A stretch of 64,000 nucleotides of DNA from Octopus sinensis. Lineage: Eukaryota. The position numbers and the translations under genes were made by a program. The notes beneath the pieces are model-generated. The model had not been told where the DNA came from. It searched no databases and was given only the letters and a program-made list of their open reading frames with translations. The stretch is from positions 190,898,001-190,962,000 of the forward strand of contig NC_042997.1 in NCBI RefSeq assembly GCF_006345805.1. The letters run 5' to 3'. Positions 7,716 through 59,235 of this stretch are shown one piece after another; position 1 is the first letter of the stretch, and each line of letters begins with the position of its first letter.

Positions 7716-7879
7716 GGAAAGAGGATGCGTAGAATGTACGTATGTATATATGCATTTATATTATTATCTATGTATGTATGGGTGTTTGTATGTGTGTGTG
7801 TGTGTGTCTGTGTTTATCGACTTAAAACCCTTTGTCTGTCCCCTCTATGTTTAGCCCCTTGTGGGCAATAAAGAAATAA

Positions 7880-8460
7880 GAATCGTTAGCACGCCAAGCA
7901 AAATGCTTAACAGCATTTCGGCTGTTTGCGTCCTGAGTTCAAATTCCGCCGAGGTTGACTTTGCTTTTCCTCCTTTCGGGGTCAATAAAATACGTACCAG
8001 TTGAACATTGATGTCGATGTAATCAACCCTTCCTGACCTCCCCCAATCTGCCCTTGTGGCAAAAATTTGAAATAATAATTATTATTGTTATTATTGCGAA
8101 GGCGGTGAGCTGGCAGAATCGTTAGCACGCCAGGCTAAATGCTTAGGGGTATTTCGTCATCCTTACATTTTGAGTTCAAATTCCGCTGAGGTCAACTTTG
8201 CCTTTCATCCTTTCAGGGTCAATAAATTAAGCACCAGTGTAACACTGAGGTTGATTTAATCGAATAGTCCCCTCCCCTAAAATTTCAGGCTTTGTGCCTA
8301 TAGTAGAAAGGATTATCATCATTATTATTGTGAAGGTAGCGAGCTGGCAGAATCGTTAGCACGCAGGGCGAAATGCTTAGAGGTCGAATTTGCCTTTCAT
8401 TCTTTCGGGGTCGATAAAATAAGTAACAGTTGAGCACTGGGGTCGATGTAATTTATCTTT
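7880..8460 (+). mobile_element. Three consecutive SINE copies (family C, gagctggcagaatcgttagc head)
   Basis: Head/body motifs recur at ~7880, ~8100 and ~8335; same family as the unit of the 49.4-50.9 kb array. Confidence 0.8.
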
Positions 8461-11239: not shown

Positions 11240-12200
11240 CACCACCTGGAAAAGTCTTTTAGTTAATTATTTCGGGACACCATGGATCACTGAAGCAGAG
11301 AGTTGTTGGTTGAGACGTATCCAGATGTAGATGGTTTATCCGGTATTTCCTGGAGAAATTTGTCCAGGTACCATCTGAAAGTTGTGGGGTCTTTTTCTAC
11401 TTTAATTTCTTTCGAGATAACATTGAAAAGAGCAGGACCATTTGCAGTGAAGAAATTGTGTCGCAATGTTCTTATGTGATGTGCTTTTGACCTTTGTAGG
11501 GGACGCAGTGCATGGGGGCCTAGTCTTGGGTGAATTGTAAACATTATACTGATATCATTTGGATAATATTGGTGGAATATTTTCCACGTGGTGCAAATGA
11601 TATATCGCTCACGGCTTTGTTGCTGAGAATAGAGCTTCAGTTAAGTCGGGCCCAATAATCAAGTCCCATCATGCCATATATTTCTTTATTGATGGATCTT
11701 TGTGACGCTTCGATCCTCATTGTGTCTTGTTTTTGTAGGGGAACCACAATGAACAGCAGTATTCGAGGTGAAGCCTAGCGAAAGTGAATAAGAGAAGGAT
11801 GATGGTTTCATGATCCCTAGATTGAAAAGTTCTGAGGACCCATGAGCACATTCTGTGGGCAACATCGACATTTTTTATTGATATGCACACTCCAGCTAAG
11901 GCTGCTGTCGACAGTTACACCTAAGTCTCTGATAGTATCCGACGCTTCAAGTAGGTCTCCAGACGATAGTGTATATGGTTGTTTGAGTGTGCCCTCTTTT
12001 CCAAACTGGATGAGCTCAAATTTTTCTTCGTTCAGCTGCATTTTTTTTTTGTGCCCACTGGGTTACTGCGCATAGATCCGATTGAAACATCGTTCGATCA
12101 TATGCTCCCTTAATGACTTTCTGGAGCTTAAAGTCATCTGCAAATATTTTAATGGAATCTGCAATGTCACTGATATAGACAATAAAAAGAAGTGGACCTA
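11240..12200 (-). mobile_element. CR1-clade LINE 3' fragment (RT C-terminal part)
   Basis: Minus strand encodes LGPLLFIVYISDIADSIKIFADDFKLQ (RT FADD motif), MQLNEEKF...RDLGVTVDSSLSW and ...FFTANGPALFN...DKFLQEIPDKP, with frameshifts. Confidence 0.88.
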
Positions 12201-12633
12201 GTTCTAGTTCGAATCACACGTGTCTCGAGATGTACTGAAGATTTTCTATTTTGGATATATTTGGGATATATTTAGGTCTGCTCATGACTTAGTGCTTGCT
12301 TTTTCCATGGGCATGCGTAAGTATTTCATTTATGTCTTACGCATTTATCGCTGACGAGGAGAAAATTCTTATTAATTAACTCTGGAATTGGGACCAATAC
12401 GGTTATAACGGAATTTTTTAGAAATTTCTCTCGGCTTGTTTCGAGACGCATGTTAATAGTGATAAATTATAATGGTTATTGAAAATTTGTCTATTTTCAG
12501 CATATTTGGCATTAGAATTTTTTTCTTTTGCGCTTGTTTTATAAGTTATTTGTAAATTCAACCTTTATAGGTATTTTTTTAATATGCTGGCCATTGATAA
12601 AAAATTTTTTCGAAAAATTTTATCCTATATAAG

Positions 12634-13874: not shown

Positions 13875-15049
13875 TTGAAAAGGGCGACAAGAAGAATTGT
13901 CAGAAAATAAGAGTGCCGGACTTCTTATCCGACTTCCAGAAATCCGGAGTTTCCCAAAATTTGTCAACACTGCAATATCATGTAATATACCGTGTCCTGT
14001 ATTGATTAAACAGATCCTGGTTTTGAAGTTGATTAATTTGCATACGATGCGTTAAAAATGGTTTTCTTCTTTACTTCTTTTAAGTGGATTCATAAAGATT
14101 ACGTGAAGGCGCATGGCTCACTGGTTAGAACGTCGGGCTTTCAATCATGAGGTAGTGATTTCGATTCGCGGACCAGGCTGCGTATTGTGTTGTGTTGTGT
14201 TGTGTTCTTGAGTAAGGCAATTTATTTCCAGTTCACTCAGCCGTACGAATGAGTTGCGATGACACTGGTACCAAGTTGTATTCGCCTTTGTTTTTCCCCT
14301 TGTATAACATCAGTGACATGGAGACTGGTATGGATGGGCAACCGCCGGTCTTTCATAAACAACCTTGCCCAGACTTGTGCCTTGTGGGGCGGGGTTAACT
14401 TTTTAGGTGCAATCCCGTGACGCTTCATGACCTTTTACCCTTTATTTTTACCCTGCTAAAGATTACACATACTCTGATTTAGAAATGTCTAATTTGTACC
14501 TGTATATGTTAAATAATATCGTGTTTCTTACTTCGTGTAATTTCCATAATATGAAAAATTTACTTTATATATGGTACAGAATTTTAAGAATTTTAAGTGG
14601 ACGAATAAATAACAAACTGACCCTACTTCAGAAGTGTATCGATTGAATTAGTTTAATACAATTTAGTTCTTTTAATAGTTTTTTTAAGCAAGCGTTTAGA
14701 AATTCTCTGGGAAACTGGAAAATCCAGAAATCCGGGACAGCTCCGGTCCTAAATTGGATAAAATGGTCTGGTACAGTATTGAGCTATGATGCATAACGAA
14801 GGGAGCGAAATGCAGAGTTTGAAAGAGTTATTTCCCTTGCTATGGTTTAATATCTTTATGTTAAACCGCTGGATTAAGTGAGTTACGTCCCTTGTATTAA
14901 AGACTTTCGTTACGTGAAATCTGCTATATTTTGCGTGTACATGCTGCGTTCGTGCGTTCGTGCGTGCGTGCGAGCGAGCGTGCGTGTGTGTGTGTGTGTG
15001 TGTGAGTATACATACACGACCATGAAATTAATAACGTAATTAGGATATA

Positions 15050-15265
15050 TTTCTTTATTGTCCACAAGGGGCTAAACATAGAGGGGACAGACAAAGGGAT
15101 TAAGTCAATTACATCGACCCCAGTGCGTAACTGGTACTTAATTTATCGACCCCGAAAGGATGAAAGGCAAAGTCGACTCGGCGGAATGTGAACTCACAAC
15201 GTAACGGCAGTCGAAATGCGGCTACACATTACGCCCGGCGTGCTAACGTTTCTGCCAACTCGAGG
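15050..15265 (-). mobile_element. Monomeric family C SINE with intact head
   Basis: Contains the whole 184-bp array unit plus the ~45-nt head (...ttggcagaaacgttagcacgccgggcg) that the array lacks. Confidence 0.85.
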
Positions 15266-17872: not shown

Positions 17873-19138
17873 AGATGCACCATCCAAAGGCAGACGTGGA
17901 TTGCCTTTACCTTCCCAGAGCTCAGGGAGGTTGAGATTTGATCCAGCTTGAACTTACATACAAAACCACCACAATCGGACTGGCCAAATACCTTGAAGCA
18001 ACCAACGATTGGATGCTAAAACTTGTTGAAAAACATGAAGGACCGAATTAACTTCACTCTATCCTCAAAGAGAGCAAAAAATTCGCTGCTGATCTCTTAG
18101 ATACCCGCCAGATTGAGCAGGCTGAAGGAAATGCACCAACTGCAGCTGCAAAGAAAATAAAATTAATTGCAAAGACAAAAGCACATGAAAATTTAGCTAG
18201 CAGATGGGAACAGAAACCTCTCCATAGCAAGTATGTGGCCCGTAGCAAACAAGCTGATGTCGACCAGAAACACATGCACCAATGGTTATGAAGCTCAGGG
18301 TAAAAGCAGAGAGTGAAGGTTTCATATTAGCTGCTCAAGACCAAAGCTTATTAACCCAGAACTACCAAGCCAATGTGATAAAAAATGGAGCTGTAACGAC
18401 GAGATTGAAACAATAGACCACCTAATCTCAGAGTGTAGAGTCTTAGACCTGCAGAATATAAAGCAAGACATGACAGAGTCGGCCAGAGTCAGACATTGGA
18501 CAATATGTTGGTATTATGAAATCAAAACCGCTGACAAATGGTATAAACACCATCCTGAAGCTGTGACTGAGGGAGAAAATGTGTCGATTCTATGGGACTT
18601 CCCCGTACAGACCGACAAGACTATAAAAGCTAATAAACCGGATATTTTTATAAAAGATCAGACAAAAAAGATGCGTTTATTAATTGACATGAGTATCCCT
18701 TGTGATCACAATATAGCGGCGAAAGAATTTGACAAGATTAGTAAATATAAAGACCTGCTAATAGAAATTGAAAAAATGTGGCATCTCAAGGCGACTACAG
18801 TACCAGTGATTGTAGGATCTCTAGGAATGATAAAAAAGGTACTGAAACCTATTTGAAAATGATTCCAGGCTTACCATCCCTACAGGAAGTGCAAACAATC
18901 GTATTAACTGGAACGGCTCATGTACTGAGAAGAGCATTATCGCTGTGAAAACAACATCCATCCATGAATTTATTTATTTATTAATTTTTATATACATACT
19001 TAATCTGTGAATTTGCTTGTGTAATCTGGGAATGCATACAATGAGCTTCTCTGCCCTAGGTGTATGGAAAACACTCGTCGAGAAACGGGAGAAAATTTGA
19101 AGAAAGAAGGAAAAAACATAATAATCATAATAATAATA
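17873..19138 (+). mobile_element. Non-LTR retrotransposon 3' fragment with restriction-like endonuclease (R4/Dong-like)
   Basis: Degenerate MHHPKADVDCLYLPRAQGG...GFILAAQDQSLL...ETIDHLIS...ILWDFPVQTDKTIKANKPDIFI...LLIDMSIP...KYKDL (PD-(D/E)xK RLE), followed by a (TAA)n tail. Confidence 0.88.
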
Positions 19139-24648: not shown

Positions 24649-27600
24649 AACAATAACAGTATGGTCATTATTTTGAACGTCGTCGTCATAAGTTTGCCAC
24701 TAAATTCTTTATAATTCTTACTTTTGATCAGTTTTGATTTTTTTCGTTATTGCTCTAATGAAAGAATTTTAATATCTAGTGTCTTTTGTAATTATCTTGA
24801 GAATCCAACTCATCTAGGTGCAAGAAATATATGGCACCCAGTGAAAATGTATACTCTCTTTTACTTGTTTCAGCCATTTAGTCGAGCAAATCGACCCCGG
24901 GACTTATTCTTTGTAAGCCCAGTACTTATTCTATCGGTCTCTTTTGCCGAACCGCTAAGTGACGGGGACGTAAACACACCAGCATCGGTTGTCAAGCAAT
25001 GCTAGGGGGACAAACACACACACATACACATATATACATATATACGACAGGCTTCTTTCAGTTTCCGTCTACCAAATCCACTCACAAGGCATTGGTCGGC
25101 CCGGGGCTATAGCAGAAGACACTTGCCCAAGATGCCACGCAGTGGGACTGAACCCGGAACCATGTGGTTGGTCAGCAAGCTACTTACCACACAGCCACTC
25201 ATACGATTATATCAAATTTTATTTAACATATTTATCAAACTCTGTAAATATACTATTTTAAGAATTTCGGACTTTGGGTATTTCAAGTGGGTTCAGCTGG
25301 TACCAAAAGCTGGTATATCACATTTTGATTACTAAGTACCAGATAGTTTTTTCAAAATGAACCCATCCCATAATTCCTGTCATTATTGATGATGAAGTCT
25401 TCTACTAACCATTTCATGACAGTGTTCCAATTTTAGAATACGTGCTGCTACCAAAGCTGACCTCTTTTTTTTTGAATAACCTTCCTCAATCCTCAGAAGA
25501 GGAGAGGTTGGTAAAAGAAGCCAAACTCGCTATCTTCAGCTAGATTTCTGTACCTTTCCCTACCTAAGGTCATACTTGTTGGATAATGACTGAAATAGTA
25601 TGATCACAAATACAAGCAGCTGAAGTGGGGTGCCTCCAAAAGGATCTCTGGAGTAACACTGTTCAAGAGGGTGCATAGTTCAGAGATCAGGGGGTCTCTC
25701 CAGTTTGAGCTGCTACTTCTCTGCATTAGAAATCACAGCTCTTGTACTATGGACAGGTGATTAGAATTGCATTGGCATTAGGAAGGGCATCCAGCTGTAG
25801 AAATTCTGCCAGATCAGATTGGAACCTGGTGCAGCCATCTGGTTTGCCAGTCCTCAGTCAAATCGTCCAACCTATGCTAGCATGGAAAGCGGACATTAAA
25901 CAATGATGATGATGTTGATGATCAACTGCAAGACGGATTCTGTAAGCCGAGTCAACCAACAGGAGACCTTAGGGTAGACTAAGAATGAGACGGTTAGATA
26001 AAAGAATATAGCTTTCAAAGATATTCTCTCCAAAGACTACACCTTCAGTACCACATGTGTGAACATTTACATTTCAACAATCAAACGTTGCAGGAAAAAA
26101 TGTAATTTTGAAAGAAATTACATAGTGGCTGTGTGTCAAGTAGCTTGTTTACCAACCACATGGTTCCAGGTTCATTCCCACTGCATGACACCTTGGGCAA
26201 GTGTCTTCTAATATAGCCTTGGGCCGACCAAAGCCTTGTGAGAGGATTTGGTAGACGGAAACTGAAGGAAGCCCGTCGTATATATGTATGTGCGTGTATA
26301 TGTTTGTGTGTCTGTGTTTGTCCCCCCAACATTGCTTGACAACCGATGGTGGTGCGTTTACGTCGCCGTAACTTAGCGTTTCAGCAAAAGAGACTGATAG
26401 AATAAGTACTAGGCTTACAAAGAATAAGTCCTGGGGTCGATTTGCTCGTGTACCTCTTTCTCCCAGTCACTTCAACATGTGGAACCATTAGTCCTGACAT
26501 TTTTTCTCTCTCTTGTATTTTTCCCTCTCATCCCTTTTTGTTAAAGTGTGTAAACTCAAAACGTCCAAGACTATTTTCATTCTTCTCGAGCATCAAACTG
26601 ATACACCTTGTTGTTCCCTCACATGTCTGTCTTTTGTTTTCTGTACATTTGAAGCATATATATATATATATGTATATATATAAATGCACAAACGGAAAAC
26701 AGACACAGAAGGTCACCAAATCCCCATCAGTTATCAGCCAGAGGGTCAAATGCAATTTCACACCTTTAACAATATTATTGATCACCTCTGGTACCACTCC
26801 AAGAAGCCACCAGGAAATGGTGAGCCAACAATGTTTGTGTATATGTATATGTATATTTATTTATATATATATATATATATATAATCATTGTTTAACATCT
26901 GCTTTCCATGCTAGCATGAGTTGGACAATTTGACTGAGGACTGGCAAACCAGATGGTTGCACAAGGCTCCAATCTGATCTGGCAGAGTTTCTACAGCTGG
27001 ATGCCCTTCCTAACACCAACCACTCCGAGAGTGTAGTAGGTGCTTTTATGTGCCTCTGGCACGAGGGCAAGTCGAGCGGTACTGGCAACGGCCATGCTCA
27101 AATGGTGCTTTTTACGTGCCACCTGCACAGGAGCCAGTCCAGCAGCACTGGCAACGAATTCACTTGGATGTTTTTTTCATGTGCCAGTAAGGCGACACTG
27201 GTAACGATCATGCTCGAACGGTGCTTTTTACGTGCCACTGGCACAGAAGCCAGTTAGCCGCTCTGGCAACGATCACGCTCAGATGGTGCTTTTAGCGCTC
27301 CATTAGCACAGATGCCAGTCATCGAATTTGATTTCGATTTCACTTGCCTCAACAGATCTTCGCAAGCAGAGTTTAGTGTCCAAGAGATAAGCACCATCCG
27401 TTCGTGGCCGTTTGCCAGCTCTGTCTGGCACCTGTGCGGGTGGCACGTAAAAAGCACCCACTACACTCTCGGAGTGGTTATTGTTAGGAAGGGCATCCAG
27501 CCGTAGAAACACTGCCAGATTTGACTGGGCCTGATGAAGCCTTCTGGCTTCACAGACCCCAGTAGAACCGTCCAACCCATGCTAGCATGGAAAACGGACG

Positions 27601-32866: not shown

Positions 32867-35800
32867 TTAATGAATTTCTTTCTACTGCCAAGAAAGATGA
32901 TGAGTTGTCAGCATCTGTACTTAAGTTTAAAATTTACATCTAGACTTATTTAGATTACTTTTCATTTTACTTTTCTAAATGTAAATTTAACCAATGAAAT
33001 ACTTCGTATACTGAACATTTGCTTATAATTTTCATGAAAAGAACAATAAAAGTATATTGTTATATTTAGTCATACATTTGCAAATTAACCACATGTACAA
33101 TATATCTGGTCTTCAGTTCAGCTTCATTATTATTTTTATTTTAGTGTCCTTTGTCAGACCTCTTTCGTAATCGCACATCCTCCTCAGTACGACCTCCTCA
33201 GTGAGGTCATGCTTTTATGTTTAGTCCATTCTGTCTTTCTGAAGAGGTCTCCGGATGTGTGATGAAAGATTTCAGACAAAGGACACTAAAATGATAATGA
33301 AACTAAAGTGAAGACCAAGTATATAGTGTGAGTGGTTAATTGGCAAAAATATGACCATCCCCAAACATAACAATATCTGCTTCAACGCAATTTCACATCA
33401 GGAATCTTGCACAACAAATACATAAACAGAATAATAAACAATTTGATGTAAGGCTGTGTGGTAAGTAGCTTGCTTACCAACCACATTGTTCTGGGTTCAG
33501 TCCCACTGCATGGCACCTAGGGCATGTGTCTTCTACTAAAGTCTCGGGCCGACCAAAGCCTTGTGAGTGGATTTGGTAGACGGAAACTGAAAGAAGACCA
33601 TCGTATATATGTATATCTATATGTGTGTATTTGTGTGTCTGTGTTTGTCCCCCCAACATCCCTTGACAACCAATGCTGGTGTGTTTACGTCCCCGTAACT
33701 TAGCGGTTCAGCAAATGAGACCGATAGAATAAGTACTAGGCTTACAAAGAATAAGTCCTGGGATCGATTTGCTCGACTACAGGCGGTGCTCCAGCATGGC
33801 CACAGTCAAATGACTGAAAAAGAGTGACAGCTAAGTTCACTTATCATGGCTTTTTGATTGAAACAGTTGAGAATTCTTATTCACAATGTCTTCTTGACAG
33901 TCCTTAGAATTGATTTTTTTATTAACCATAAAACAAATGAAACCAAAGATACAGTTTTTAACAAGGCTTTTATTTTTCTGTTTAATTAACTGCATTAAGA
34001 TGTCTGATTTGATATTTGCCTCTAACACCTTACAGTGGCCTATAATTTAATTCTTGTTTAGCTCCAGTATAGTCCTTATTTGTGGAGGCGCGTGGCTTAG
34101 TGGTTAGGGTGTCAGCATCATGATCGTAAGATTGTGGTTTCGATTCCTAGACCAGGCGACGTGTTGTGTTCTTGAGCAATACACTTCATTTCACGTTGCT
34201 CCAGTCCACTCAGCTGGCAAAAATGAGTAACGCTGCGATGAACTGGTGTCCCATCAAGCTGGGGAACACATATGCCATAGAAACTAGGAAACCAGGCCCA
34301 CGAACCTGGCTAGGCTTTAAAAAGGGCGCATTTATTTTTATTATGGTCTTTATTTAGTATATCTGTAATCGGATGTGCTCCATCCAAAACCAACCCATCT
34401 TTATAAACCTTCCTTTGTTTAATTTTTTTAAAGATGGTAGCATGGGATTTCAAAGAATTTGGTTACTGTTTCTAGCATATCATTCAACTACATAGAGGCT
34501 TTTCTCTTTAATTCATATAATAGTGGAAATGTTTGTAGTTGAAAAGAGGATTACAGTCATAGTCATCAACAACCATCTAATTTTGATGAGTGGATAGCAC
34601 AAAAACATTTGCAATGAGCTTAGACTTGCATTCATTTGCTTATAAGACCTCCTGCTTGGGTTTTTTCTTGCTCTACACACATACATATCCATCCTTCTGG
34701 CTAATTTTACATTTACATGTGGTTTACATTTACACATGGATAATTTGCAAAAAGTATGACTAAATATAATAACATACTTTTATTATTCCTTTTAGTATAC
34801 AAAGTATTTCATTGGTTAAATTTACATTTAAAAAAGCAAAATGAAAAGTAATCTAATTTGATTAAAAGTAATCTAAATATGTCTAGATGTAATTTCAAAC
34901 TTAAGTACAGATGCTGACAACTCATCATCTTTCTTGGCAGTAGAAAGAAATACTTTCTCTACATATACAGGATAGAAAGATACTTGGACAAAAAAAACAT
35001 TTTGTTGTTGTACCCATACAAAACAAAAAAACTTGTAAATTTGTCTATAATTGCTAATTACTTCCAATCAGTTAAGATCAAAAGCCATGAGAGCCACTGC
35101 TTGGTACTGCATCGGGACATTTATTATTATTATGAAGGTAGTGAGCTGGTAGAATCATAAGTACACTGGGCAAAATGCTTAGTGGCATTTTGTCCGTCCT
35201 TACATTCTGAGTTCAAATTCTGCCAGGGTTGACGTTGCCTTTCATCCTCTTGGGGGGTCAATGAAATAAGTACCAGTTATAATTAACTAGTTCCTCCCCC
35301 AAAATTTCAGGCCTTGTACCTTTAGTAGAAATATTAATATTACTTCCAATTTAGCGAAGCCAGAGGTATTGTTTTCAGTCGTGTTTGTTTGACAAGCTAT
35401 CTCAAAAACTGCTGGAGGGATTTGGATGAAACTTTCAGGAACATTTGGCCTCATAACTGACACAAGCTAATTAGATTTTGGGATCGATCTGGTACTGGAC
35501 AAAGATTCTGGATTAATTATATTTACTTTACTTTTACATGATTATGATCTTATGTTAACTTTCAAGTCTTTCTAAATTATCCCCCTTTAGGCTGTAACTA
35601 TTTTGAATGGTGAATTTGTTAACTTTGGTTTGTATTAGATAAGGATAAACTATTTATTACTGTTACTAAACATTCTAAAACCACTTACACATTTCATGGC
35701 AACCATTGGGATTGATCAGGTACTGAACAAAGACCTGGATTATTTTTCGAGTTTTTTTTACTTAATTTTGAGAGTGGTCAGGTTCATTTTTAGTATTCTC

Positions 35801-37116: not shown

Positions 37117-39537
37117 ATTTAGACTTCGTGGGGACTGTGTACGCTCAGTTTATCTCGAGAGTGCTTTCTAAAGTTTCATGTAATCAACTTAATTAACTGC
37201 CGAACGAAAGATAACGGCTGTTGGTACAGCTACACTGACACCACTAACAGATTTGTGTAATCTGGTAGTAGTTTTAAACTATTGCAATGATCGTACGCAT
37301 ACACACACACACATACACATACACTGACAAACTCTCCCTCACATGATCGTGCTTTTTAAGTCAGGTGACTTGTGCACATAACAATAGCACACCCTATCAT
37401 TGTATTGAATATCTTTTCACAGTTAATGGCTGTATTGAGCAGACACAAAGTAAAAGTGAGCCATGGACTATGAAGATCTCTCTCTTGATGGGTATAACCT
37501 TAAGTATTCAACTTCCATCCCTACCCGCTGAAATACTTTCTTTTAGGTTCATCTTCTGAAACAAAATTATTGGTTGTTTTTGTTGATTATTTTCTCAGGT
37601 TTTTGTAAACTTTTAAAATGTTCTTTTAATTCCACAGAATTTACAAGGCTTGTCATTCTGGCCATGTTAATGCATTTATGTATGATATATAAATTGAAGT
37701 ATAGTCAGTCAGGCGTAGGAGTGGCTGTGTGGTAAGTAACTTGCTTACCAACCACATGATTCCGGGTTCAGTCCCACTGTGTGACACCTTGGGCAAGTCT
37801 TCTACTATAGCCTCGGGCTAACGAAAGCTTTGTGAGTGGATTTGGGAGACAGAAACTGAAAGAAGCCCATCGTATATATATATGTACCTGTGTGTATATG
37901 TTTGTGTATCTGTGTTTGTCCCCCCAACATCACTTGACAACCGATGCTGGTGTGTTTACGTCCCTGTAACTTAGTGGTTCGGCAAAAGAGACCGATAGAA
38001 TAAATACTAGGCTTACAAAGAATAAGTTCTGGGGGTCGATTTGCTTGACTAAAGGTGGTGCTCCAGCACGACCTCAGTCAAATTACTGAAAACAAGTAAA
38101 AGAGAGTAAAAGAGTAAACTATAATATATCAACTGGACTAAACAATTTATTGCATCTATTTCAAGGCCTTGTGTTTCTAAATTAAAATGTTTATTAGTGT
38201 TAATTTTTTTTTTTGTCTTCATCTTTTCCATCACCAAAATGAATTAAGTATCAGTAATATATTTGAGTTTATTCAATTAATTATACCTCCACATCATCTA
38301 CTACACGTGACCTTTCACATAATAATTTAAGGAAGGCCAACATTCTTAATGTAATAATATTTAGTTCTAATAAAGAAAATATGATAAAGAAGAATCTGAA
38401 GACAATACATTCAGATTGTTATGAAGTATGACATTGGTTCCCAACCTTTCTGCAATATATCTGGAACAACAGGTTTGTAGGCTGCACTTAGCCATTTGGC
38501 CAACTACTGACAGAGATATGCTATGACTGGTCAGAACTGACCTGATGCTATGCAACAACATTTCCGCTACAAAACAATAAACAACCCTCCTCTTCAGTCA
38601 AGTACATCAACATCAACATCTAAATAAAAATCAAATAGAAATTGTAGTTGAGACACCTGTGCCGGTGACACGTAAAAAGCACCGTCCAAACATGGCAGAT
38701 GCCAGCGCTGCCTGATTGGCGTCCATGTCGGTGACATGTAAAAGCACCAACCAATTGTGGCCATTTGCCAGCCTCCTCTGGCCCCTGTGCCGGTGGCATG
38801 TCAAAAAACACCCACTACACTCACGGAGTGGTTGGCGTTAGGAAGGGCATCAAGGTGTAGAAACACTGCCAGATCAGACTGGAACCTGGTACAGCCTCCT
38901 GGCTTCCCAGACCTCGGTCAAACCGTCCAACCCATGCTAGCATGGAAAACGGACGTTAAATGATGAATATAGAAACACTGCCAGATTTGACTGGGCCTGA
39001 TGAAGCCTTCTGGCTTCACAGACCCCAGTAGAACCGTCCAACCCATGCTAGCATGGAAAACGGACGCTAAACGATGATGATGATGATGATGATATATATA
39101 TATATATATATATAGATAAGAGATAATGGTGTCATTGAGGCCCAAAGTGTTAGGTAATGCTGAATAAGTGCTATAGACAGACCATAGTTAAGTGACCTAT
39201 TTTTAGGTCACTTTAAATAAAAGCCTTTGACTCTGCAACACTGTATATAAATTCTCTACTGAGAATGACCAGGTTTAAAAATCTGCTGGATCTCACTGAT
39301 AAGGGAATCTTACATTGCTTATAAACTCTATATTTGGAAGGACTCATTCTAAACTCTGTTGGACTTTTGGACTTTACTCACAGGATATTGGAATATTGAA
39401 TATATACCATTATGTCTACAAAACGGATCTACAACTTCAATACCCATACATATCTTGCATCTATTTTCTTTCCTCCACCTCACTCTCTATTTTGTATCAT
39501 ATCTAAACTAACTACGACTTAACTATCCTCTCACACC

Positions 39538-48381: not shown

Positions 48382-48476
48382 ATCTAAGTTGGCTAACTTA
48401 TTTAACATTGATAAACAGTCGAATAAGGGCGGAAATGAAAGCCTCACTTACACAGCCCCTAAACAGCCCAAAAAAG
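48382..48476 (+). CDS. FKBP15: FKBP15 exon 2 (SKLANLFNIDKQSNKGGNESLTYTAPKQPKK)
   Basis: ttttattacag|A acceptor and G|GTATG donor; 95 nt, phase 2 to 1. Carries the FKBP15-type motifs KLAxLF and YTAPKQPKK. Confidence 0.95.
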
Positions 48477-48665
48477 GTATGTTACCTTTTTTACTTTTTT
48501 TTTTCTTTCCATATGCCTATTAAATTAATCAGTGACTAAGAATATTTTACAGAATTGTTAATTACATTCTGCTATTGTTGATTGTCTTAGATGTATTTTC
48601 ACCATTTTTTTCCTAAATGAACTTAACCTTATTTTTAATTTTATTCTTTGGTTCTCTTTGCATAG

Positions 48666-48789: not shown

Positions 48790-49200
48790 CTCTTTACTCT
48801 TTACTCTTTTACTTGTTTCAGTCATTTGACTGCGGCCATGCTGGAGCACCGCCTTTAGTCGAGCAAATCGACCCTGGGACTTATTCTTTGTAAGCCCAGT
48901 ACTTATTCTATCGGTCTCTTTTGCCAAACCGCTAAGTGACGGGGACGTAAACACACCAGCATCGGTTGTCAAGCAATGCTAGGGGCACAAACACAGACAC
49001 ACAAACATATAAACACACATATACATATATGTACATATATACGACAGGCTTCTTTCAGTTTCCGTCTACCAAATCCACTCACAAGGCATTGGTCGGCCTG
49101 AGGCTATAGCAGAAGACACTTGCCCAAGATGCCACGCAGTGGGACTGAACCCGGAACCATGTGGTTGGTTAGCAAGCTACTTACCACACAGCCACTCCTG
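48790..49200 (-). mobile_element. Major SINE (family A), full length
   Basis: Begins ~55 nt downstream of the exon 3 donor. Confidence 0.9.
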
Positions 49201-49400
49201 CACCTTCTTGGATTTTTTTTTCTTTTTTTGAATGTGAGATTAGATATGAGATTAGCTACAAAGTATTTCATGCATAAAATTTGTTATATTGGGAAGAAAG
49301 ATAATTTTTTAAAAAATTTCTTTATTTTGTCATTCATAGCTGTGTGTTAAGAAATTTGCTTCTCCACCACACAGAGGTTCGGTTCCACTGTGTAGTACCT

Positions 49401-50861
49401 ATTTCTTTATTACCCACAAGGGGCTAAACATAGAGGGGACAAACAAAGACAGACATAGGTATTAAGTCGATTACATTGACCCCAGTGCGTAACTGGTACT
49501 TATTTAATCGACCCCGAAAGGATGAAAGACAAAGTTGACCTCGGCGAAATTTGAACTCAGAATGTAACAGCAGACGAAATCCCTATTTCTTTACTGCCCA
49601 CAAGGGGTTAAACACAGATGGGACAAACAAGGACAGACGAGGTATTAAGTTGATTACATCGACCCCAGCGTAACTGGTACTAATTTATCGACCCCGAAAG
49701 GATGAAAGGCAAAGTCGACCTCGGCGGAATTTGAACTCAGAACGTAAAGACAGACGAAATCCCTATTTCTTTACTGCCCACAAGGGGTTAAACACAGATG
49801 GGACAAACAAGCAGACAGAGGTATTAAGTTGATTACATCGACCCCAGTGCGAACTGGTACTTAATTTATCGACCCCGAAAGGATTGAAGGCAAAGTCGAC
49901 CTCGGCGGATTTGAACTCAACGTAAAGACAGACGAAATCCCTATTTCTTTACTGCCCACAAGGGGTTTTACACACAGATGGGACAAACAAGGACAGACAG
50001 AGGTATTAAGTTGATTACATCGACCCCAGTGCGTAACTGGTACTTAATTTATCGACCCCGAAAGGATGAAAGGCAAAGTCGACCTCGGCGGAATCTGAAC
50101 TCAGAACGTAAAGACAGACGAAATCCTATTTCTTTACTGCCAACAAGGGGTTAAACACAGATGGGACAAACAAGGACAGACAGAGTGGTATTAAGTTGAT
50201 TACATCGACCCCAGTGCGTAACTGGTACTTAATTTATCGACCCCGAAAGGATGAAAGGCAAAGTCGACCTCGGCGGAATCTGAACTCAGAACGTAAAGAC
50301 AGACGAAATCCCTATTTCTTTACTGCCCACAAGGGGTTAAACACAGATGGGACAAACAAGGACAGACAGAGGTATTAAGTTGATTACATCGACCCCAGTG
50401 CGTAACTGGTACTTAATTTATCGACCCCGAAAGGATGAAAGGCAAAGTCGACCTCGGCGGAATTTGAACTCAGAACGTAAAGACAGACGAAATCCCTATT
50501 TCTTTACTGCCCACAAGGGGTTAAACACAGATGGGACAAACAAGGACAGACAGAGGTATTAAGTTGATTACATCGACCCCAGTGCGTAACTGGTACTTAA
50601 TTTATCGACCCCGAAAGGATGAAAGGCAAAGTCGACCTCGGCGGAATCTGAACTCAGAACGTAAAGACAGACGAAATCCCTATTTCTTTACTGCCCACAA
50701 GGGGTTAAACACAGATGGGACAAACAAGGACAGACAGAGGTATTAAGTTGATTACATCGACCCCAGTGCGTAACTGGTACTTAATTTATCGACCCCGAAA
50801 GGATGAAAGGCAAAGTCGACCTCGGCGGAATCTGAACTCACAACGTAACGACAGACGAAAT
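49401..50861 (-). repeat. Tandem array of 8 x ~184-bp SINE-body units
   Basis: Units start near 49398, 49582, 49762, 49940, 50125, 50311, 50495 and 50679. Flanked by ACTGTGTAGTACCT at 49387-49400 and 50862-50875. Confidence 0.95.
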
Positions 50862-51176
50862 ACTGTGTAGTACCTTGAGCAAACCATCTTCCACTATAAC
50901 CCTAGGCTGACCAAAGTTTTGCAAGTGTATTTTGTATCCAGAAACTAAAAGACACCCAGCGTGTATGTGTGTGTTTATGCATGTATTGTGTTTGTGTGAG
51001 TTCTTATTTCCCTCATCTACACATCTGTTTGCTCACTGGTTATAAATAATAGCTTCACTATTGTTTGCAGTCTAATCAACTGTGTGGCATTTTGGGCAAG
51101 TGTTTTCTACTATAGCTTCAGCCTGACCAAAGCTTTGTGAATGGATTTGGTAAACAGAAAGTGAAAGTAGCCAGTC

Positions 51177-51238
<62 letters not shown>

Positions 51239-53059
51239 TTCTTCACGGGCTCGCTCAGCAATGGCTAAGGAAAGATCCTTATTTATTTCTTTGATGGCTT
51301 TTTTGATCATGTGACACTCAAAGCTTTCTAACAGTTTCACAAGTTGGTTGCCTTTTACATCAAAGTCAGAAACTGATGGTGGAGTGACTAAAGGGTCCAC
51401 AACATTTGCAAATCCTACAACTGATGTTCTGCTATACTTCTTCTGGTCTAAATTCTGAAGAACTGGGAAGAGGATTTTTTTCCAATATATTTTACAAAAT
51501 TCTTGATAATCTGTCACAGGGTTCCCTGAAGATAAACAAAGAACATTATTTTTCCAGCACTTCTTTAAAACTTCAAGTTGTTTCCAGAGTATTAGGTAAC
51601 ATCTTAAAACCAGATAAATATCAGTTGGTTTTTGACTATTTATGTATTGATTAAGTCTTTCCTTGTTTGTTTTGCAAAATAGTGGTTTTGTCTCTAATAA
51701 TATTTTATATATATATATATATATTACTCTACCACTGGTATTTGAGTACTCTTTTTTTCCACCTTGTTTCACATTTATGTGTTTACTCTGGTGTATATAT
51801 ATATATATATATATAATATATCATCATCATTTAACATCCACTTTCCATGCTAGCATGAGTTGGAAGATTTGACTGAGGTCTGGTGAGCCAGATGGCTGCA
51901 CCAGATTCCAAATCTGATCTGGCAGAGTTTCTACAGCTGGATGCCCTTCCTAATGCCAACCACTCCAAGAGTGTAGTGGGTGCTTTTACGTGCTATCGGC
52001 ATGAGGGCCAGTGTGTTGTGTGTGTGTCTTTGTGTCTGTGTTGGTGTGTTTATGTTCCCATAACTTAGTGGTTCAGCAAAAGTGACCCATAAAATAAGTA
52101 GTCAGTTGACTAAAAATTCTTCAAGGTACTCCATCATGGCCACAGTCATAGCCAGAAGTAAAAGATAAGTTGCACGCATGCACAATTTAAGTCTGTCTCA
52201 AGCCTACAGGCTCACTAAGCCAAAGCTTATCCCAGTCACTGAGGTATTTCACTTGATGAGAGTACAAGGCCTTACTCAGTCTATTAATCTGGGTTAACCC
52301 CCAGCTCCTGAGGCTACCCGTTTTCAGCTGAAAGGACTGGAGTAATATGAAAGAAGTGCTTTTGCTCAAGAACACCTGGCCTGAAAATTGAACTCTTGAT
52401 CTTACATTCAGGGGTTCAACACCTTAACTTCTAACCCATGAGACTTTGTGTGTGTGTGTGTGTATTATTATTTTATTTGTTTCGTTCATTTGAGCACCAC
52501 CTTGAGGGGTTTTGGTCAAACAATTCGATCCCAGGACTTATTTTTTTTAAAGCCTAGTACTTCTATCAGTCTCTTTTGCTGAACCACTAAGTTACAGGGC
52601 CATAAACACACCAACACCAGTTGTCAAGTGGTTATGGACACACTCCCACACATACATAGATATATGTATCTGTATATATATTATATATATATAATAGGCT
52701 TCTTTCAGTTTCCATCTACCAAATCCACTCACAAGGCTTTGGTTGGCCCAAGGCTATAATAGAAGACACTTGCCTAAGGTGTCATGCAGTGGAATTGAAC
52801 CCAGAACCATGTGGTTGAGAAGCAAGCTTCTTACCACACAGCCACGCCTACATGTGTGTGAAATTATTATTGTAACAAGTTGAAAATTCCACCTAAAACT
52901 GCTATGATTATTTTTCTAAGATCTCATCTATTAAGTATGCCAAGTAATTACTTTGATCATTAAAAATACATCTCTATATCATGAATGTTTTAAACCTAAT
53001 TTCCACCAACTTTGAATATTCTTTACATTTACATTATTGCATTTTTAATTATTATTCAG

Positions 53060-53129: not shown

Positions 53130-54332
53130 GTGCGTTACCATTTGTTACTATCAGAACAAGAACCAATGCTGACCATTTCTATATTAGATGACTTAATGAG
53201 CTTGTTTATATTTCCTCTGTCAGTTAGTCGTTTTCTCTCTTTGATTAATTGATCATATATATGTATGCATACATGCATCATCATCATCGTTTAACATCCG
53301 TTTTCCGTGCTAGCACGGGTTGGACAGTTCGACCGGTGTCTGCACCAGGCTCCAGTCTGATCTGGCAGTGTTTCTACAGCTGGATGCCCTTCCTAACGCC
53401 AACCACTCCGTGAGTGTAGTGGGTACTTTTTACATGCCACCGGCACAGAAGTCAGGGGAGGCTGGCAGCAGCCACGATCGGTTGGTGCTTTTTACATGCC
53501 ACCGGCACAGAAGCCAGTCAAGGTGGCGCTGGCATCGGCCACGTTCGGATGGTGCTTTTTACGTGCCACCAGCACAGGTATCACATGCATACTTGCATCA
53601 TAATTACTTATAATGTATTCAGTATATTTTCAGTGAAACTTATTCTGTGTAGTTAAATATGTCACCAAAAAAAAATTGCAAAAAAATAAATGTTAATTTT
53701 AGCAATTTCTTATAAAATAAAAATGATGAACTTATTGTTATACAGTGCTCAGGTGCACTACAATATCTTGTAAATATATTGTTTACTGAGGTAGTTCTTC
53801 AAATAGTAAGCTATTAAGCTTTGAAAAGAGTAGTAATACTCTTTTACTTGTTTCAGTCATTTGACTGTGGCCATACTGGATATAGCCGGTTTAATATTGA
53901 AGCAACGTGTATTTCAATTGAAATATGGTAACAAAATGGTTAATACACTAGGTATTTCATCTCTGTTTACCTGCAGTCCATAACATTATCATCTCATCTT
54001 ATTTAATAGTTCGCTTAGGCATTGCAAGACTAATAATAACCTGATGTAGAACTCAATATATGTATGTTTCAGAATAAAGTATTAGATGAGTATAGAGCAG
54101 TAATAAGAAAAAGAGATGACACAGGAAGAACAATGGTTATGTTATGGACTTCATTAGCTTACAGCTGTTTCAGTTCTATCAGCAATGACTTTCTCACTGG
54201 TGTTGCCTTCCCTGTATATTGCAAAAATGTAATCCTTCTTTTTCCCAAATAAATTGCACTTTATATTCGAGGCTCCAATGAAGCTATAGGATGTTATTCG
54301 GGCATTTAACGAGTTCACTGCATCCTCTAGCA

Positions 54333-56072: not shown

Positions 56073-56171
56073 ATGCAACCAAATAACTATGCTATGTTCT
56101 ATGATGCAGCGAAACAAGGTTGGTCAATTTTGTTCGAATCTGAACAAGTTGCTCATAAATTCGCGAAAGAA
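56073..56171 (+). CDS. FKBP15: FKBP15 exon 6 (MQPNNYAMFYDAAKQGWSILFESEQVAHKFAKE), WH1-like region
   Basis: ttcttgtttag acceptor and GAA|GTAAG donor; 99 nt. PNNY..FYD...WSI.FESE motif. Confidence 0.96.
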
Positions 56172-56508
56172 GTAAGCTCATTTCTTTTAACACAATTTTC
56201 TATTTGTTTTACTTGTAGCAAGACTGCTTATACCTATTTAGTATTGAGTCATTTAGTTCTAATTATTTAGTGTTGAGTCATTTAACTGAAGCATATTTTT
56301 TTTAATGGTGTTTTAATAAAAATTTATTAACAAAGGCGTAGGAGTGGCTGTGTGGTAAGTAGCTTGCTTACGAACCACATGGTTCCTGGGTTCAGTCCCA
56401 CTGCATGGCACCTTGGGCAAGTGTCTTCTACTATAGCCTCGGGCCGACCAAAGCCTTGTGAGCAGATTTGGTAGAAGGAAATTGAAAAAGAAGCCCATTG
56501 TATATATG

Positions 56509-58639: not shown

Positions 58640-58875
58640 AAAGTTTGTGTTATGGAACCAGAGGCAGTCTCAAGCAGTTTAGTTGCAAAGGGGCTAATAT
58701 GTTCCCTGCCACCTACAAGGTTTTGAGTAGGAAGATAGTGAAAATTATCCAATTATAATTCGTTAGTAACAATATCCAACCTGTTCACTTTTGAAAACAA
58801 ATTTAAGGAAGTTTTTTTTAAACAATAACAAAGACAAAATTTTTTTTTTAATTCAATTCTAAACTTTTATTTCAG

Positions 58876-59028
58876 ATTGCCATTGCCAAATCAAAATCAT
58901 GTGATGGTGCCTTAGATACTGTAATTATCCAGGATTTGGTTCATGGAGAAGGCAATCCATTAGAGACTGGTGACTCTGCAGAAGTGAAATATACTGGATG
59001 GTTACTTACTAATAAAAAACTTGGACAG
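58876..59028 (+). CDS. FKBP15: FKBP15 exon 7 (IAIAK...QDLVHGEGNPLETGDSAEVKYTGWLLTNKKLGQ), start of FKBP domain
   Basis: ttttatttcag acceptor and CAG|GTATG donor; 153 nt. FKBP-fold motif GD..EVxYTGWL. Confidence 0.96.
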
Positions 59029-59235
59029 GTATGTGTCAGTGTCTGATGAAAAATCTCAGACTGTTCCTTTTCATCTTATTGTCTTCATGTATTGATTGAC
59101 TATTTGATTTTAACCAGCCTATCATGGGACATTTTCAACAAATTTTTAATTTTATAATCAAGATGCTATTGTTGACAGAAATTCTTGTAGTATTTATTCC
59201 ACCCTTTTAAGTTGAGTTAAAATCTCAGAGGTCAA

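What the first reader, a model, noticed from the sequence alone, without database searches (positions are those of the whole stretch)
49387..50875. Eight-unit headless SINE multimer inserted as one event (single 14-bp TSD) in FKBP15 intron 3
Seen: 8 head-to-tail ~184-bp units are bounded by one direct repeat, ACTGTGTAGTACCT (49387-49400 and 50862-50875). They split another SINE, whose halves rejoin across the array. The TSD is absent from all internal junctions (GACGAAAT-C-CCTATTTC), so the array did not arise by recombination between the TSDs of a monomer; at least a dimer existed before insertion. Every unit, including the 5'-most, starts at the same base (ATTTCGTC on the minus strand). Each keeps the B-box-like GTTCA(A/G)ATTCC but lacks the ~45-nt A-box head present in the monomer at 15050-15265. 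The element's 3' end overlaps the TSD by CCT, like TPRT microhomology. Units 5-8 are nearly identical, while unit 1 differs at about a dozen positions. Inference: the template was a multimeric or circular SINE RNA (rolling-circle reverse transcription or iterative template jumping), possibly with later expansion. That would be a retrozyme-like amplification mode for a cephalopod SINE. Caveat: scattered 1-nt deletions in units 2-4 may be uncorrected long-read errors.
Basis: partly seen in the sequence, partly recalled or inferred. Interest (0 to 1): 0.72.

Follow-up and report, generated by a model that had tools for sequence, protein, structure and literature searches.

The report
Headless SINE tandem array, single TSD
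A short mobile element that lost its promoter head sits as eight tandem copies inside another mobile element in an octopus gene intron; it probably arrived as at least a dimer and was then amplified on the spot, and similar SINE arrays are already known in molluscs.

Summary
There are eight head-to-tail ~184-bp units (49401-50861, element sense on the minus strand). One perfect 14-bp direct repeat bounds them, and they split an older SINE whose halves rejoin. All seven internal junctions read GACGAAAT-CC(C)-TATTTC and contain no TSD. Every unit lacks the ~46-50-nt head that carries the A box.

The array begins and ends exactly at the unit termini and holds a whole number of units. No hammerhead or other ribozyme is present, and the unit RNA folds no better than shuffled sequence. 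That fits linear templates, not a rolling circle or a retrozyme.

"Eight units in one event" is not supported. Units 2-8 differ by 0-4 substitutions. Edge unit 1 differs from all of them by 18-20, and the only private changes of unit 8 lie in its outermost 21 nt. This is the edge pattern of an array that turns over in place.

My best reading is a 5'-truncated SINE that was concatenated during reverse transcription by end-to-end template jumping (at least 2 units), then expanded and homogenised in situ. A purely in-situ origin is not excluded. A genome-wide junction count and orthologous loci could not be reached with these tools.

The parts
49387..49400 (.). Left copy of the target-site duplication ACTGTGTAGTACCT. 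Its last 3 nt (CCT) could equally be the 3' end of the element (AGG in element sense).
50862..50875 (.). Right copy of the target-site duplication, identical 14/14.
49401..50861 (-). Array of eight head-to-tail headless SINE units. The + strand unit starts (TATTTCTTTA) are at 49400, 49584, 49764, 49942, 50127, 50313, 50497 and 50681. Unit lengths are 184, 180, 178, 185, 186, 184, 184 and 181. GC is 44% against 37% for the window.
49400..49583 (-). Unit 1, the 3'-most in element sense and the first to be reverse transcribed. It differs from every other unit by 18-20 substitutions and has no indels. It keeps family-like states at 5 sites supported by both outgroups (alignment columns 14, 116, 155, 164, 178) and up to 6 more supported by one. 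It has about 7 private changes, 3 of them CpG decay.
49584..50680 (-). Units 2-7, the homogenised core. They differ by 0-4 substitutions and share derived states. Units 2-5 carry 1-5 small indel events each with almost no substitutions, which probably reflects consensus or sequencing error.
50681..50861 (-). Unit 8, the 5'-most in element sense. It starts at ATTTCGTC directly after the TSD and lacks the GGG filler. Its only 2 private differences lie in the outermost 21 nt, and one of them is the ancestral state.
49573..49593 (+). First of the seven internal junctions, GACGAAAT-CCC-TATTTCTTTA. The others are at 49753, 49931, 50117 (CC only), 50302, 50486 and 50670. In element sense the junction reads ...AAAGAAATA-GGG-ATTTCGTC....
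49339..49400 (.). Left half of the older host SINE that the insertion split.
50876..50997 (.). Right half of the host SINE, continuous with the left half once the array and one TSD copy are removed.
15045..15265 (-). Dispersed near-full-length relative with the A-box head. Its 3' end is ...AAAGAAATA followed by a TATCCT TSD, so it has no GGG. Used as an outgroup.
48382..48477 (+). Coding exon of the surrounding FKBP15-like gene (…SKLANLFNIDKQ…YTAPKQPKK), with ag/gt borders. The array lies in the intron downstream of it and is antisense to the gene.

Best explanation
A 5'-truncated copy of an abundant octopus SINE inserted by target-primed reverse transcription into an older SINE in an intron. 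The copy has a B-box-like motif, a conserved core and an ...AAAGAAATA tail, but lacks the head that carries the A box. The insertion made a 13-14-bp TSD. The TSD-free head-to-tail junction (...GAAATA-GGG-ATTTCGTC...) was most likely made during that reverse transcription. [quoted passage not shown] So at least a dimer was integrated. A less likely variant is that an already multimeric transcript was copied. The present eight-unit state is not the inserted state. The array has since expanded and been homogenised in place by unequal exchange or replication slippage. That left the edge units (all of u1, and the outer 21 nt of u8) as older relics around a young core. Shown: the insertion, the TSD, the junction sequence, the unit history, and the absence of a ribozyme or of special RNA structure. 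Inferred: template jumping as the origin of the first junction, and the number of units at integration.
For: The insertion and TSD are real. All junctions lack the TSD and join the family's normal 3' end to ATTTCGTC with only GGG between. Two window copies end ...GAAATA and L001 ends ...GAAATAA; none has GGG. The array is exactly 8 units, and both borders coincide with unit ends. This is automatic for end-to-end joining of linear templates. If the RNA ended ...AUAGGG, the primer end CCT-3' of the nicked target pairs with AGG. That explains both the u1/TSD overlap and the full AGGG at inner junctions without any extra change. Both in-situ routes predict AGGT, so they need an additional T>G. In a toy model with random breakpoints, a duplication overlapping the insert matches both of its ends within 3 nt at about 7e-5. 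Non-LTR reverse transcriptases are documented to add non-templated nucleotides and to jump templates, making concatemers (L1 ORF2p, PMC10830420; R2, Bibillo & Eickbush 2004 as cited in PMC2881922). Template switching is also the accepted source of dimeric and trimeric SINEs (PMC4758252). For in-situ turnover: u2-u8 differ by 0-4 substitutions while u1 differs by 18-20. The tree is (u1,(u8,(u2-7))), with at least 5 shared derived states in u2-8. Both of u8's private differences fall in its outermost 21 of 181 nt (P about 0.014), and one is the ancestral state.
Against: There is no independent evidence for a headless RNA species or a stall site. None of about 10 other family copies in the window begins at ATTTCG. 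The GGG filler is only 3 nt and has three competing sources: non-templated addition, a 3' extension from the source locus, or a remnant of the TSD or of the head loop. So the junction alone cannot prove an RNA-level origin. The asymmetry between the edges (u1 fully divergent, u8 nearly homogenised) is not predicted in detail. The junction could not be counted elsewhere in the genome, and no orthologous locus was obtained. The unit number rests on one assembly whose inner units show error-like indels.
Confidence: 0.5

Rival explanations
1. The origin is purely in situ. A single headless monomer inserted. Later a DNA-level tandem duplication created the first junction, and unequal exchange expanded the array. 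The duplication could be end-joining or replication template switching with 0-1 nt of microhomology. Alternatively it could be TSD-TSD unequal crossover followed by deletion of about 10 bp inside the internal TSD.
For: Three of the four junction nucleotides (AGG in sense, CCT on the + strand) are identical to the adjacent end of the TSD, as expected if flank sequence was included. Unequal recombination is the explanation usually given for SINE arrays in bivalves and squamates (PMC11481361, PMC10702118). The later array dynamics are clearly in situ.
Against: Both breakpoints would have to fall within 0-3 nt of the insert's ends, which happens at about 7e-5 in a random-breakpoint toy model. The predicted junction is AGGT (ACCT on the + strand) but all junctions read AGGG, so an extra substitution or filler base is needed before amplification. 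No junction keeps any further TSD sequence. It differs from the bivalve TSD1-(SINE)n-TSD1 arrays, where the first unit keeps a full head and only the last a full tail (PMC11481361).
Confidence: 0.22
2. A young single event brought in all eight units. The reverse transcriptase copied one RNA (u1) and then jumped seven times onto RNAs from a different source gene (u2-u8). On this view u1's divergence reflects a different template, not age.
For: u1 is as far from u2-8 (JC 0.105) as the unrelated copies are (0.094 and 0.133), while u2-8 are almost identical. The TSDs are perfect. There is no hybrid u1/X unit next to u1.
Against: Seven consecutive jumps onto one RNA species after a first, different one is an unusual series. 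u8's two private differences cluster in the outermost 21 nt (P about 0.014), and one restores the ancestral base, which fits an edge relic rather than random new mutation. Column 33 (A/G) is shared among subsets of units, so the pattern is not star-like. Perfect TSDs are still expected about 20-25% of the time under the old-array model.
Confidence: 0.12
3. Rolling-circle reverse transcription of a circular headless SINE RNA, that is, a retrozyme-like mode.
For: The units are tandem and of retrozyme-like size (184 nt). The junctions are precise and TSD-free.
Against: Rfam finds no hammerhead or any other self-cleaving ribozyme at E<=10 on either strand, and there is no CUGANGA core. The unit RNA is not self-paired: z = +1.64 in sense and +0.60 in antisense. 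The array starts and ends at the same phase as the junction and holds a whole number of units. On a circle that has a chance of roughly a few in 184 at each end.
Confidence: 0.03
4. The unit number, or part of the array, is an assembly artefact. The real locus would then hold fewer or more units.
For: Units 2-5 carry 1-5 small indel events each but only 0-2 substitutions. That ratio is typical of long-read consensus error inside repeats and not of evolution.
Against: u1 and u8 carry unit-specific substitutions. The flanks and TSD are clean, and the array is in phase. At least u1, a core unit and u8 must therefore be real.
Confidence: 0.1

Closest known systems
Tandem-like SINE arrays in bivalves, especially TSD1-(SINE)n-TSD1 in Scapharca broughtonii (Mob DNA 2024, PMC11481361)
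   Same: The host is a mollusc and the SINE belongs to a family with a conserved core domain. Arrays hold 4-15 units and are often intronic. One TSD pair encloses the whole array, with no TSD between units.
   Different: In the clam the first unit has a complete head with a truncated tail, the inner units are truncated at both ends, and the last has a complete tail. That is an internal duplication within one insert. Here every unit has the same complete 3' end and the same truncated 5' end, and these are also the ends of the whole insert. That points to end-to-end joining of whole templates.
End-to-end template jumping by non-LTR reverse transcriptases, giving concatemers and chimeric retrocopies (R2: Bibillo & Eickbush 2004; L1 ORF2p: PMC10830420; origin of SINE dimers and trimers: PMC4758252)
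   Same: The 5' end of one copy is joined to the 3' end of the next with a few extra nucleotides. A single TSD encloses the product, and no homology is needed.
   Different: Those cases are shown in vitro or as two-part chimeras. A homomeric multi-unit SINE product is only inferred here, and most of the eight units are better explained by later DNA-level amplification.
SINE-derived satellites in squamates (PMC10702118)
   Same: Tandem arrays are built from part of a SINE and show partial homogenisation.
   Different: The squamate satellites occur at many loci and are attributed to unequal recombination or to repeated insertion at one locus. Here only one locus is known, and it has a clear enclosing TSD.
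Metazoan non-LTR retrozymes (NAR 2020, PMC7229834)
   Same: They are short tandem repeats of 150-450 bp, present in molluscs, with low to moderate GC and sometimes flanked by TSDs.
   Different: Each retrozyme unit has a type I hammerhead ribozyme and forms a highly self-paired circRNA. Neither feature is present here.

Membership tests
SINE (Pol III-type head, LINE-mobilised) | Internal promoter with A and B boxes | tested here: not met
   Each unit keeps the B-box-like GTTCA(A/G)ATTCC. The ~46-50-nt head with the A-box-like TGGC(A/T)(G/C)AAT(C/T)G is absent from all 8 units and present in full-length relatives. The units are therefore truncated copies of a SINE, not autonomous source genes.
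SINE (Pol III-type head, LINE-mobilised) | Head recognisably derived from a tRNA | tested here: inconclusive
   ARAGORN finds no tRNA in the window. The Rfam tRNA model gives no match at E<=10 on two intact heads. There are only box-like motifs and a faint resemblance to a mouse miRNA precursor model (mir-3473), which from memory I take to be derived from a B2-type SINE head.
SINE (Pol III-type head, LINE-mobilised) | Dispersed copies flanked by variable TSDs | tested here: met
   At least 10 related copies are in the window. TSDs of about 6 to 21 bp were seen by eye at 15045-15265 and 621-~830, and of 14 bp here.
Metazoan non-LTR retrozyme | Type I hammerhead ribozyme in every unit | tested here: not met
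   The Rfam E-value scan of 48800-51400 on both strands gives no ribozyme hit. There is no CUGANGA on either strand.
Metazoan non-LTR retrozyme | Highly self-paired unit RNA | tested here: not met
   The minimum free energy is no better than for dinucleotide shuffles: z = +1.64 in sense and +0.60 in antisense.
Metazoan non-LTR retrozyme | Expressed as circular RNA | not testable with these tools
   No transcriptome data are available.
SINE-derived tandem array, TSD1-(SINE)n-TSD1 type | At least 3 head-to-tail units of one SINE family inside one TSD pair, with no TSD between units | tested here: met
SINE-derived tandem array, TSD1-(SINE)n-TSD1 type | First unit with complete head and last unit with complete tail (internal-duplication signature described in bivalves) | tested here: not met
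   All units, including the first and the last, share the same 5' and 3' ends.
Template-jump concatemer / chimeric retrocopy | Junction joins a template 5' end directly to a template 3' end with 0 to a few extra nucleotides, and the whole product lies inside one TSD | tested here: met
   The junction reads ...GAAATA-GGG-ATTTCGTC.... The array ends coincide with unit ends, and one TSD encloses the array.
Template-jump concatemer / chimeric retrocopy | The same junction recurs at independent loci, or multimeric cDNA is shown | not testable with these tools
   No cephalopod genome is reachable: protein database, metagenome scan, viral contigs.

The most novel reading that the evidence does not exclude
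The headless unit is a real, recurrent RNA species. Its 5' end would be created by cleavage or by a reverse-transcription block inside the tRNA-like head. The partner LINE's reverse transcriptase would habitually concatenate it by end-to-end jumping, so that retrotransposition itself seeds SINE-derived tandem arrays at many loci in octopod genomes. This locus would be one example. In the extreme version, all eight units here came from one such event.
Probability: 0.12. Interest if true: 0.6.

Novelty: new variant of a known kind. Interest (0 to 1): 0.33.

Why it matters
How dispersed repeats turn into tandem repeats is still argued mostly from unequal recombination. A locus where whole, identically truncated SINE units are joined end to end inside one TSD is a candidate for a different first step: concatenation by the reverse transcriptase, followed by ordinary array dynamics. 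If the junction recurs genome-wide, it would give a testable route from SINE to satellite in cephalopods, whose genomes are unusually rich in SINEs (11.6% of O. vulgaris, PMC13282606). As a single locus it is a well-defined but modest curiosity. It also places 1.5 kb of antisense repeat 0.9 kb downstream of an exon.

Tried and rejected
(1) I searched the 5.8-billion-protein database with the 71-aa ORF that spans the junction, hoping to find other junction-bearing loci. There was one hit (P0001/L001), an ordinary SINE with no junction.
(2) I scanned the metagenome contigs with a gapped junction pattern. It returned 120 chance hits. None carries the SINE core or the exact junction, and the pattern was too loose for that collection.
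(3) The viral-contig scan for the SINE core gave 0 hits.
(4) I searched with exon peptides to reach orthologous FKBP15 loci and got 0 hits. Pfam on exon and LINE-like ORF fragments also gave 0 hits.
(5) Ribozyme or retrozyme: rejected.
(6) Successive independent insertions into the same site: rejected. All units share one truncation point, the inner units share derived mutations, and no TSDs separate the units.
(7) A second insertion of u2-u8 next to an older u1: rejected, because no direct repeat flanks u2-u8 alone.
(8) Slippage between the GAAAT in the head and the GAAAT at the tail of a full-length insert: considered because BLAST aligned the junction to L001's head (GAAATAGTGGTGTTTCG). It is rejected as the whole story, because the 5'-most unit would then keep the head.
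(9) A recurrent ATTTCG 5' end among other copies in the window: not seen.
(10) tRNA identity of the head, to place the truncation point in a cloverleaf: ARAGORN and Rfam were negative. One MFE fold puts AUUUCGUC in a hairpin loop, but I give that little weight.

Full report
WHAT IS THERE. Tandem Repeats Finder reports a single array at 49398-50861 with period 184, 8.0 copies and 95% matches. The 14-mer ACTGTGTAGTACCT occurs exactly twice in the 64-kb window, at 49387-49400 and 50862-50875, even when one mismatch is allowed. Dinucleotide shuffles give 0.03 matches. I removed the array and one copy of the 14-mer. The joined flanks (49339-49400 plus 50876-~50997) then align without a break across the 14-mer to about 15 other copies of an unrelated, older SINE in the window. 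So the array is a real insertion into that SINE, and the 14-mer is a real target-site duplication.

The inserted element reads on the minus strand. All seven internal junctions are GACGAAAT-CCC-TATTTCTTTA on the + strand, with one, u4/u5, reading CC. In element sense this is ...AAAGAAATA-GGG-ATTTCGTC.... No junction contains TSD sequence beyond those few bases.

WHAT THE UNIT IS. The unit is 86% identical to a dispersed copy at 15045-15265. It shares its core with at least 10 other copies in the window and with one SINE on an unrelated 543-bp metagenome contig, L001. Full-length relatives (8097-8330, L001) begin GGCGGTGAGCTGGC(A/T)(G/C)AAT(C/T)GTTAGC.... They carry 46-50 nt upstream of ATTTCG that all eight units lack. 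That missing head holds the A-box-like motif. The B-box-like GTTCA(A/G)ATTCC is kept.

The tRNA origin of the head is not confirmed by tools. ARAGORN finds nothing, and the Rfam tRNA model finds nothing at E<=10 on two intact heads. Two window copies end ...AAAGAAATA and L001 ends ...GAAATAA, each followed by unrelated sequence. So the GGG at the junction is not part of the known 3' end. A 12-nt linker duplication shared by all eight units is also present in L001. It is therefore a subfamily trait, not a mark of this locus.

HISTORY OF THE UNITS. Counting substitutions only, units 2-8 differ from one another by 0-4. Unit 1 differs from every other unit by 18-20 (JC 0.105). That is about as far as the unrelated copies at 15045 (0.094) and L001 (0.133) are from the core consensus. 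With those two copies as outgroups, units 2-8 share at least 5 clearly derived states. Unit 1 has about 7 private changes, 3 of which are CpG decay. Unit 8 shares the derived states but keeps the ancestral G at alignment column 16. Its only two private differences lie in the outermost 21 of its 181 nt (P about 0.014 if placed at random). The tree is therefore (u1,(u8,(u2-u7))), and the oldest sequence sits at the two outer edges. That is the expected footprint of an array that keeps being homogenised by unequal exchange or slippage, except at its borders.

With the published octopus rate (JC 0.065 is about 18 My, PMC13282606), the split between u1 and the core would be on the order of 14 My if it happened at this locus. 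The core is far younger. Two identical 14-bp TSDs after that time have a probability of about 0.2-0.25, so they are not informative. Units 2-5 carry 1-5 small indel events each with almost no substitutions.

THE CIRCULAR / RETROZYME READING. Metazoan retrozymes are tandem repeats of 150-450 bp. Each unit carries a type I hammerhead ribozyme and is expressed as a highly self-paired circular RNA (PMC7229834). Here an Rfam scan with permissive thresholds finds no ribozyme on either strand of the array, and there is no CUGANGA core. The unit RNA folds no better than shuffled sequence: z = +1.64 in sense and +0.60 in antisense.

More tellingly, the array is a whole number of units, and both borders coincide with the junction phase. 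The 3' border is ...GAAAT(AGG) and the 5' border is ATTTCGTC.... A rolling circle has no ends, so initiation and termination should fall at arbitrary phases. Linear templates joined end to end, or duplication of a whole insert, give this pattern automatically. I therefore reject the retrozyme-like mode (about 3%).

ORIGIN OF THE FIRST JUNCTION. Two families of explanation remain.

(A) RNA/cDNA level. Non-LTR reverse transcriptases add non-templated nucleotides at the end of a template and jump to the 3' end of another, producing concatemers. This is shown for L1 ORF2p in vitro (PMC10830420) and for R2 (Bibillo & Eickbush 2004, cited in PMC2881922). It is also the accepted source of dimeric and trimeric SINEs and of module exchange (PMC4758252). 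This explains a junction made of a complete 3' end, 3 extra nucleotides and one fixed 5' end. It explains the lack of a TSD between units, the single enclosing TSD, and the in-phase borders. If the template ended ...AUAGGG, the nicked target's CCT-3' pairs with AGG. That accounts for the 3-nt overlap at the u1/TSD border and for the full AGGG at inner junctions without any further change.

(B) DNA level. A monomer was duplicated in place. The three bases AGG at the junction equal the start of the TSD, which is what B predicts. However, both versions of B predict AGGT where all junctions have AGGG. The two versions are a duplication with 1-nt microhomology, and TSD-TSD crossover followed by an internal deletion. 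B also needs both breakpoints within 0-3 nt of the insert's ends. A toy simulation with random breakpoints gives about 7e-5 for that. The figure is an illustration, not a calibrated probability.

I therefore prefer A (about 0.6 for 'at least one junction predates or accompanies integration') over B (about 0.2). The argument rests on 3-4 nucleotides and on parsimony. There is no independent evidence for a headless RNA or a stall site, and none of the other about 10 copies in the window starts at ATTTCG. One fold of an intact head places AUUUCGUC in a hairpin loop, which is compatible with a cleavage or stall site but proves nothing.

EIGHT UNITS AT ONCE? In it, u1 was copied from one RNA and u2-u8 from seven successive jumps onto a second RNA, all recently. 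It would explain why u1 is as divergent as an unrelated copy and why no u1/core hybrid unit exists. The edge-clustered, partly ancestral differences of u8 and the shared A/G polymorphism at column 33 count against it. So does the improbability of seven jumps onto one RNA species. I give it about 0.12. The number of units at integration cannot be read from the present sequence.

COMPARISON WITH WHAT IS KNOWN. SINE tandem arrays are established. In bivalves, arrays of 4-15 units, many of them intronic, occur as TSD1-(SINE-TSD1)n and as TSD1-(SINE)n-TSD1 (PMC11481361). Squamates have SINE-derived satellites (PMC10702118). The present array has the second bivalve architecture on the outside but not on the inside. 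In the clam, the first unit keeps a full head and only the last a full tail, which marks an internal duplication. Here all units share both ends with the insert itself. That makes it a variant of a known kind, in a class (Cephalopoda) where I found no description of such arrays in the papers searched. It is not a new kind of element.

CONTEXT. The array lies about 0.9 kb downstream of a + strand exon with canonical splice borders at 48382-48477, and it is antisense to the gene. Further exon-like translations lie at 56073-56267 and 58852-59043. The latter matches only FKBP-type isomerases in PDB, weakly (E from 0.016 up to 1.3). I recognise the peptides as FKBP15-like from memory. The intron number was not verified.

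LIMITS. No cephalopod genome, reads or transcriptome were reachable. The ORF that spans the junction gave one irrelevant hit. The metagenome scan gave only chance matches. The viral contigs gave none, and the exon peptides gave none. The decisive tests were therefore not done. They are a genome-wide junction census, orthologous or allelic loci, spanning reads, and RNA ends.

VERDICT. Interest is moderate to low (0.33). It is a new variant of a known kind.

Noticed in passing
window 7816-8460 (+ sense): Four related SINE copies lie head to tail. A tail-only copy ends ...AAAGAAATAA and abuts, with no spacer, a second copy that is 5'-truncated at GAATCGTTAGC. Two more copies follow, each starting right after the (ATT)n-type tail of the previous one. 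L001's SINE head is likewise preceded by (ATT)n(GTT)n. The cause is either tail-targeted insertion or template-jump concatenation; TSDs could not be resolved.
   Followed up: partly
window 35057-35350: A 12-bp direct repeat, ATTACTTCCAAT (35057-35068 and 35339-35350), encloses a 50-bp piece found nowhere else in the window, then (ATT)4, then a full-length SINE. This is a candidate two-part chimeric retrocopy inside one TSD, which would be independent evidence for template jumping by the same machinery. The origin of the 5' piece is unknown.
   Followed up: partly
window 49584-50312 (units 2-5): There are many 1-2-nt indels with almost no substitutions, whereas unit 1 has 18 substitutions and no indel. 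This looks like long-read consensus error inside the repeat, so the local assembly may be imperfect.
   Followed up: partly
window 27183-27319 and 53422-53577: TRF finds 65-67-bp units in 2.1-2.4 copies with a similar consensus (…GGTGCTTTT(T)ACATGCCAC.GGCACAGAAG…). Similar ORF translations recur at about 41.8, 55.4 and 61.0 kb. This appears to be a different repeat family with a built-in internal tandem duplication.
   Followed up: no
window 38858-39077: A 111-bp unit is repeated twice in tandem (86% matches). I did not examine its nature.
   Followed up: no
window 48382-48477, 56073-56267, 58852-59043 (+): These are exon-like translations of an FKBP15-like gene. The first has canonical ag/gt borders. 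The third matches the start of FKBP-type isomerase domains in PDB (E from 0.016). The protein database returned no hit at all for these peptides.
   Followed up: partly
window 621-~830: A full-length related SINE is flanked by a 21-bp direct repeat, ATCGATATTTAAGTAAAACCC (seen by eye). So this SINE group makes long TSDs, and the 14 bp at the array is within its range.
   Followed up: no
window 11290-12213 (-) and 18317-18853 (+): Longer ORF fragments here look like remnants of retrotransposon proteins. The pieces I tested gave no Pfam hit. A partner LINE for the SINE was not identified.
   Followed up: partly
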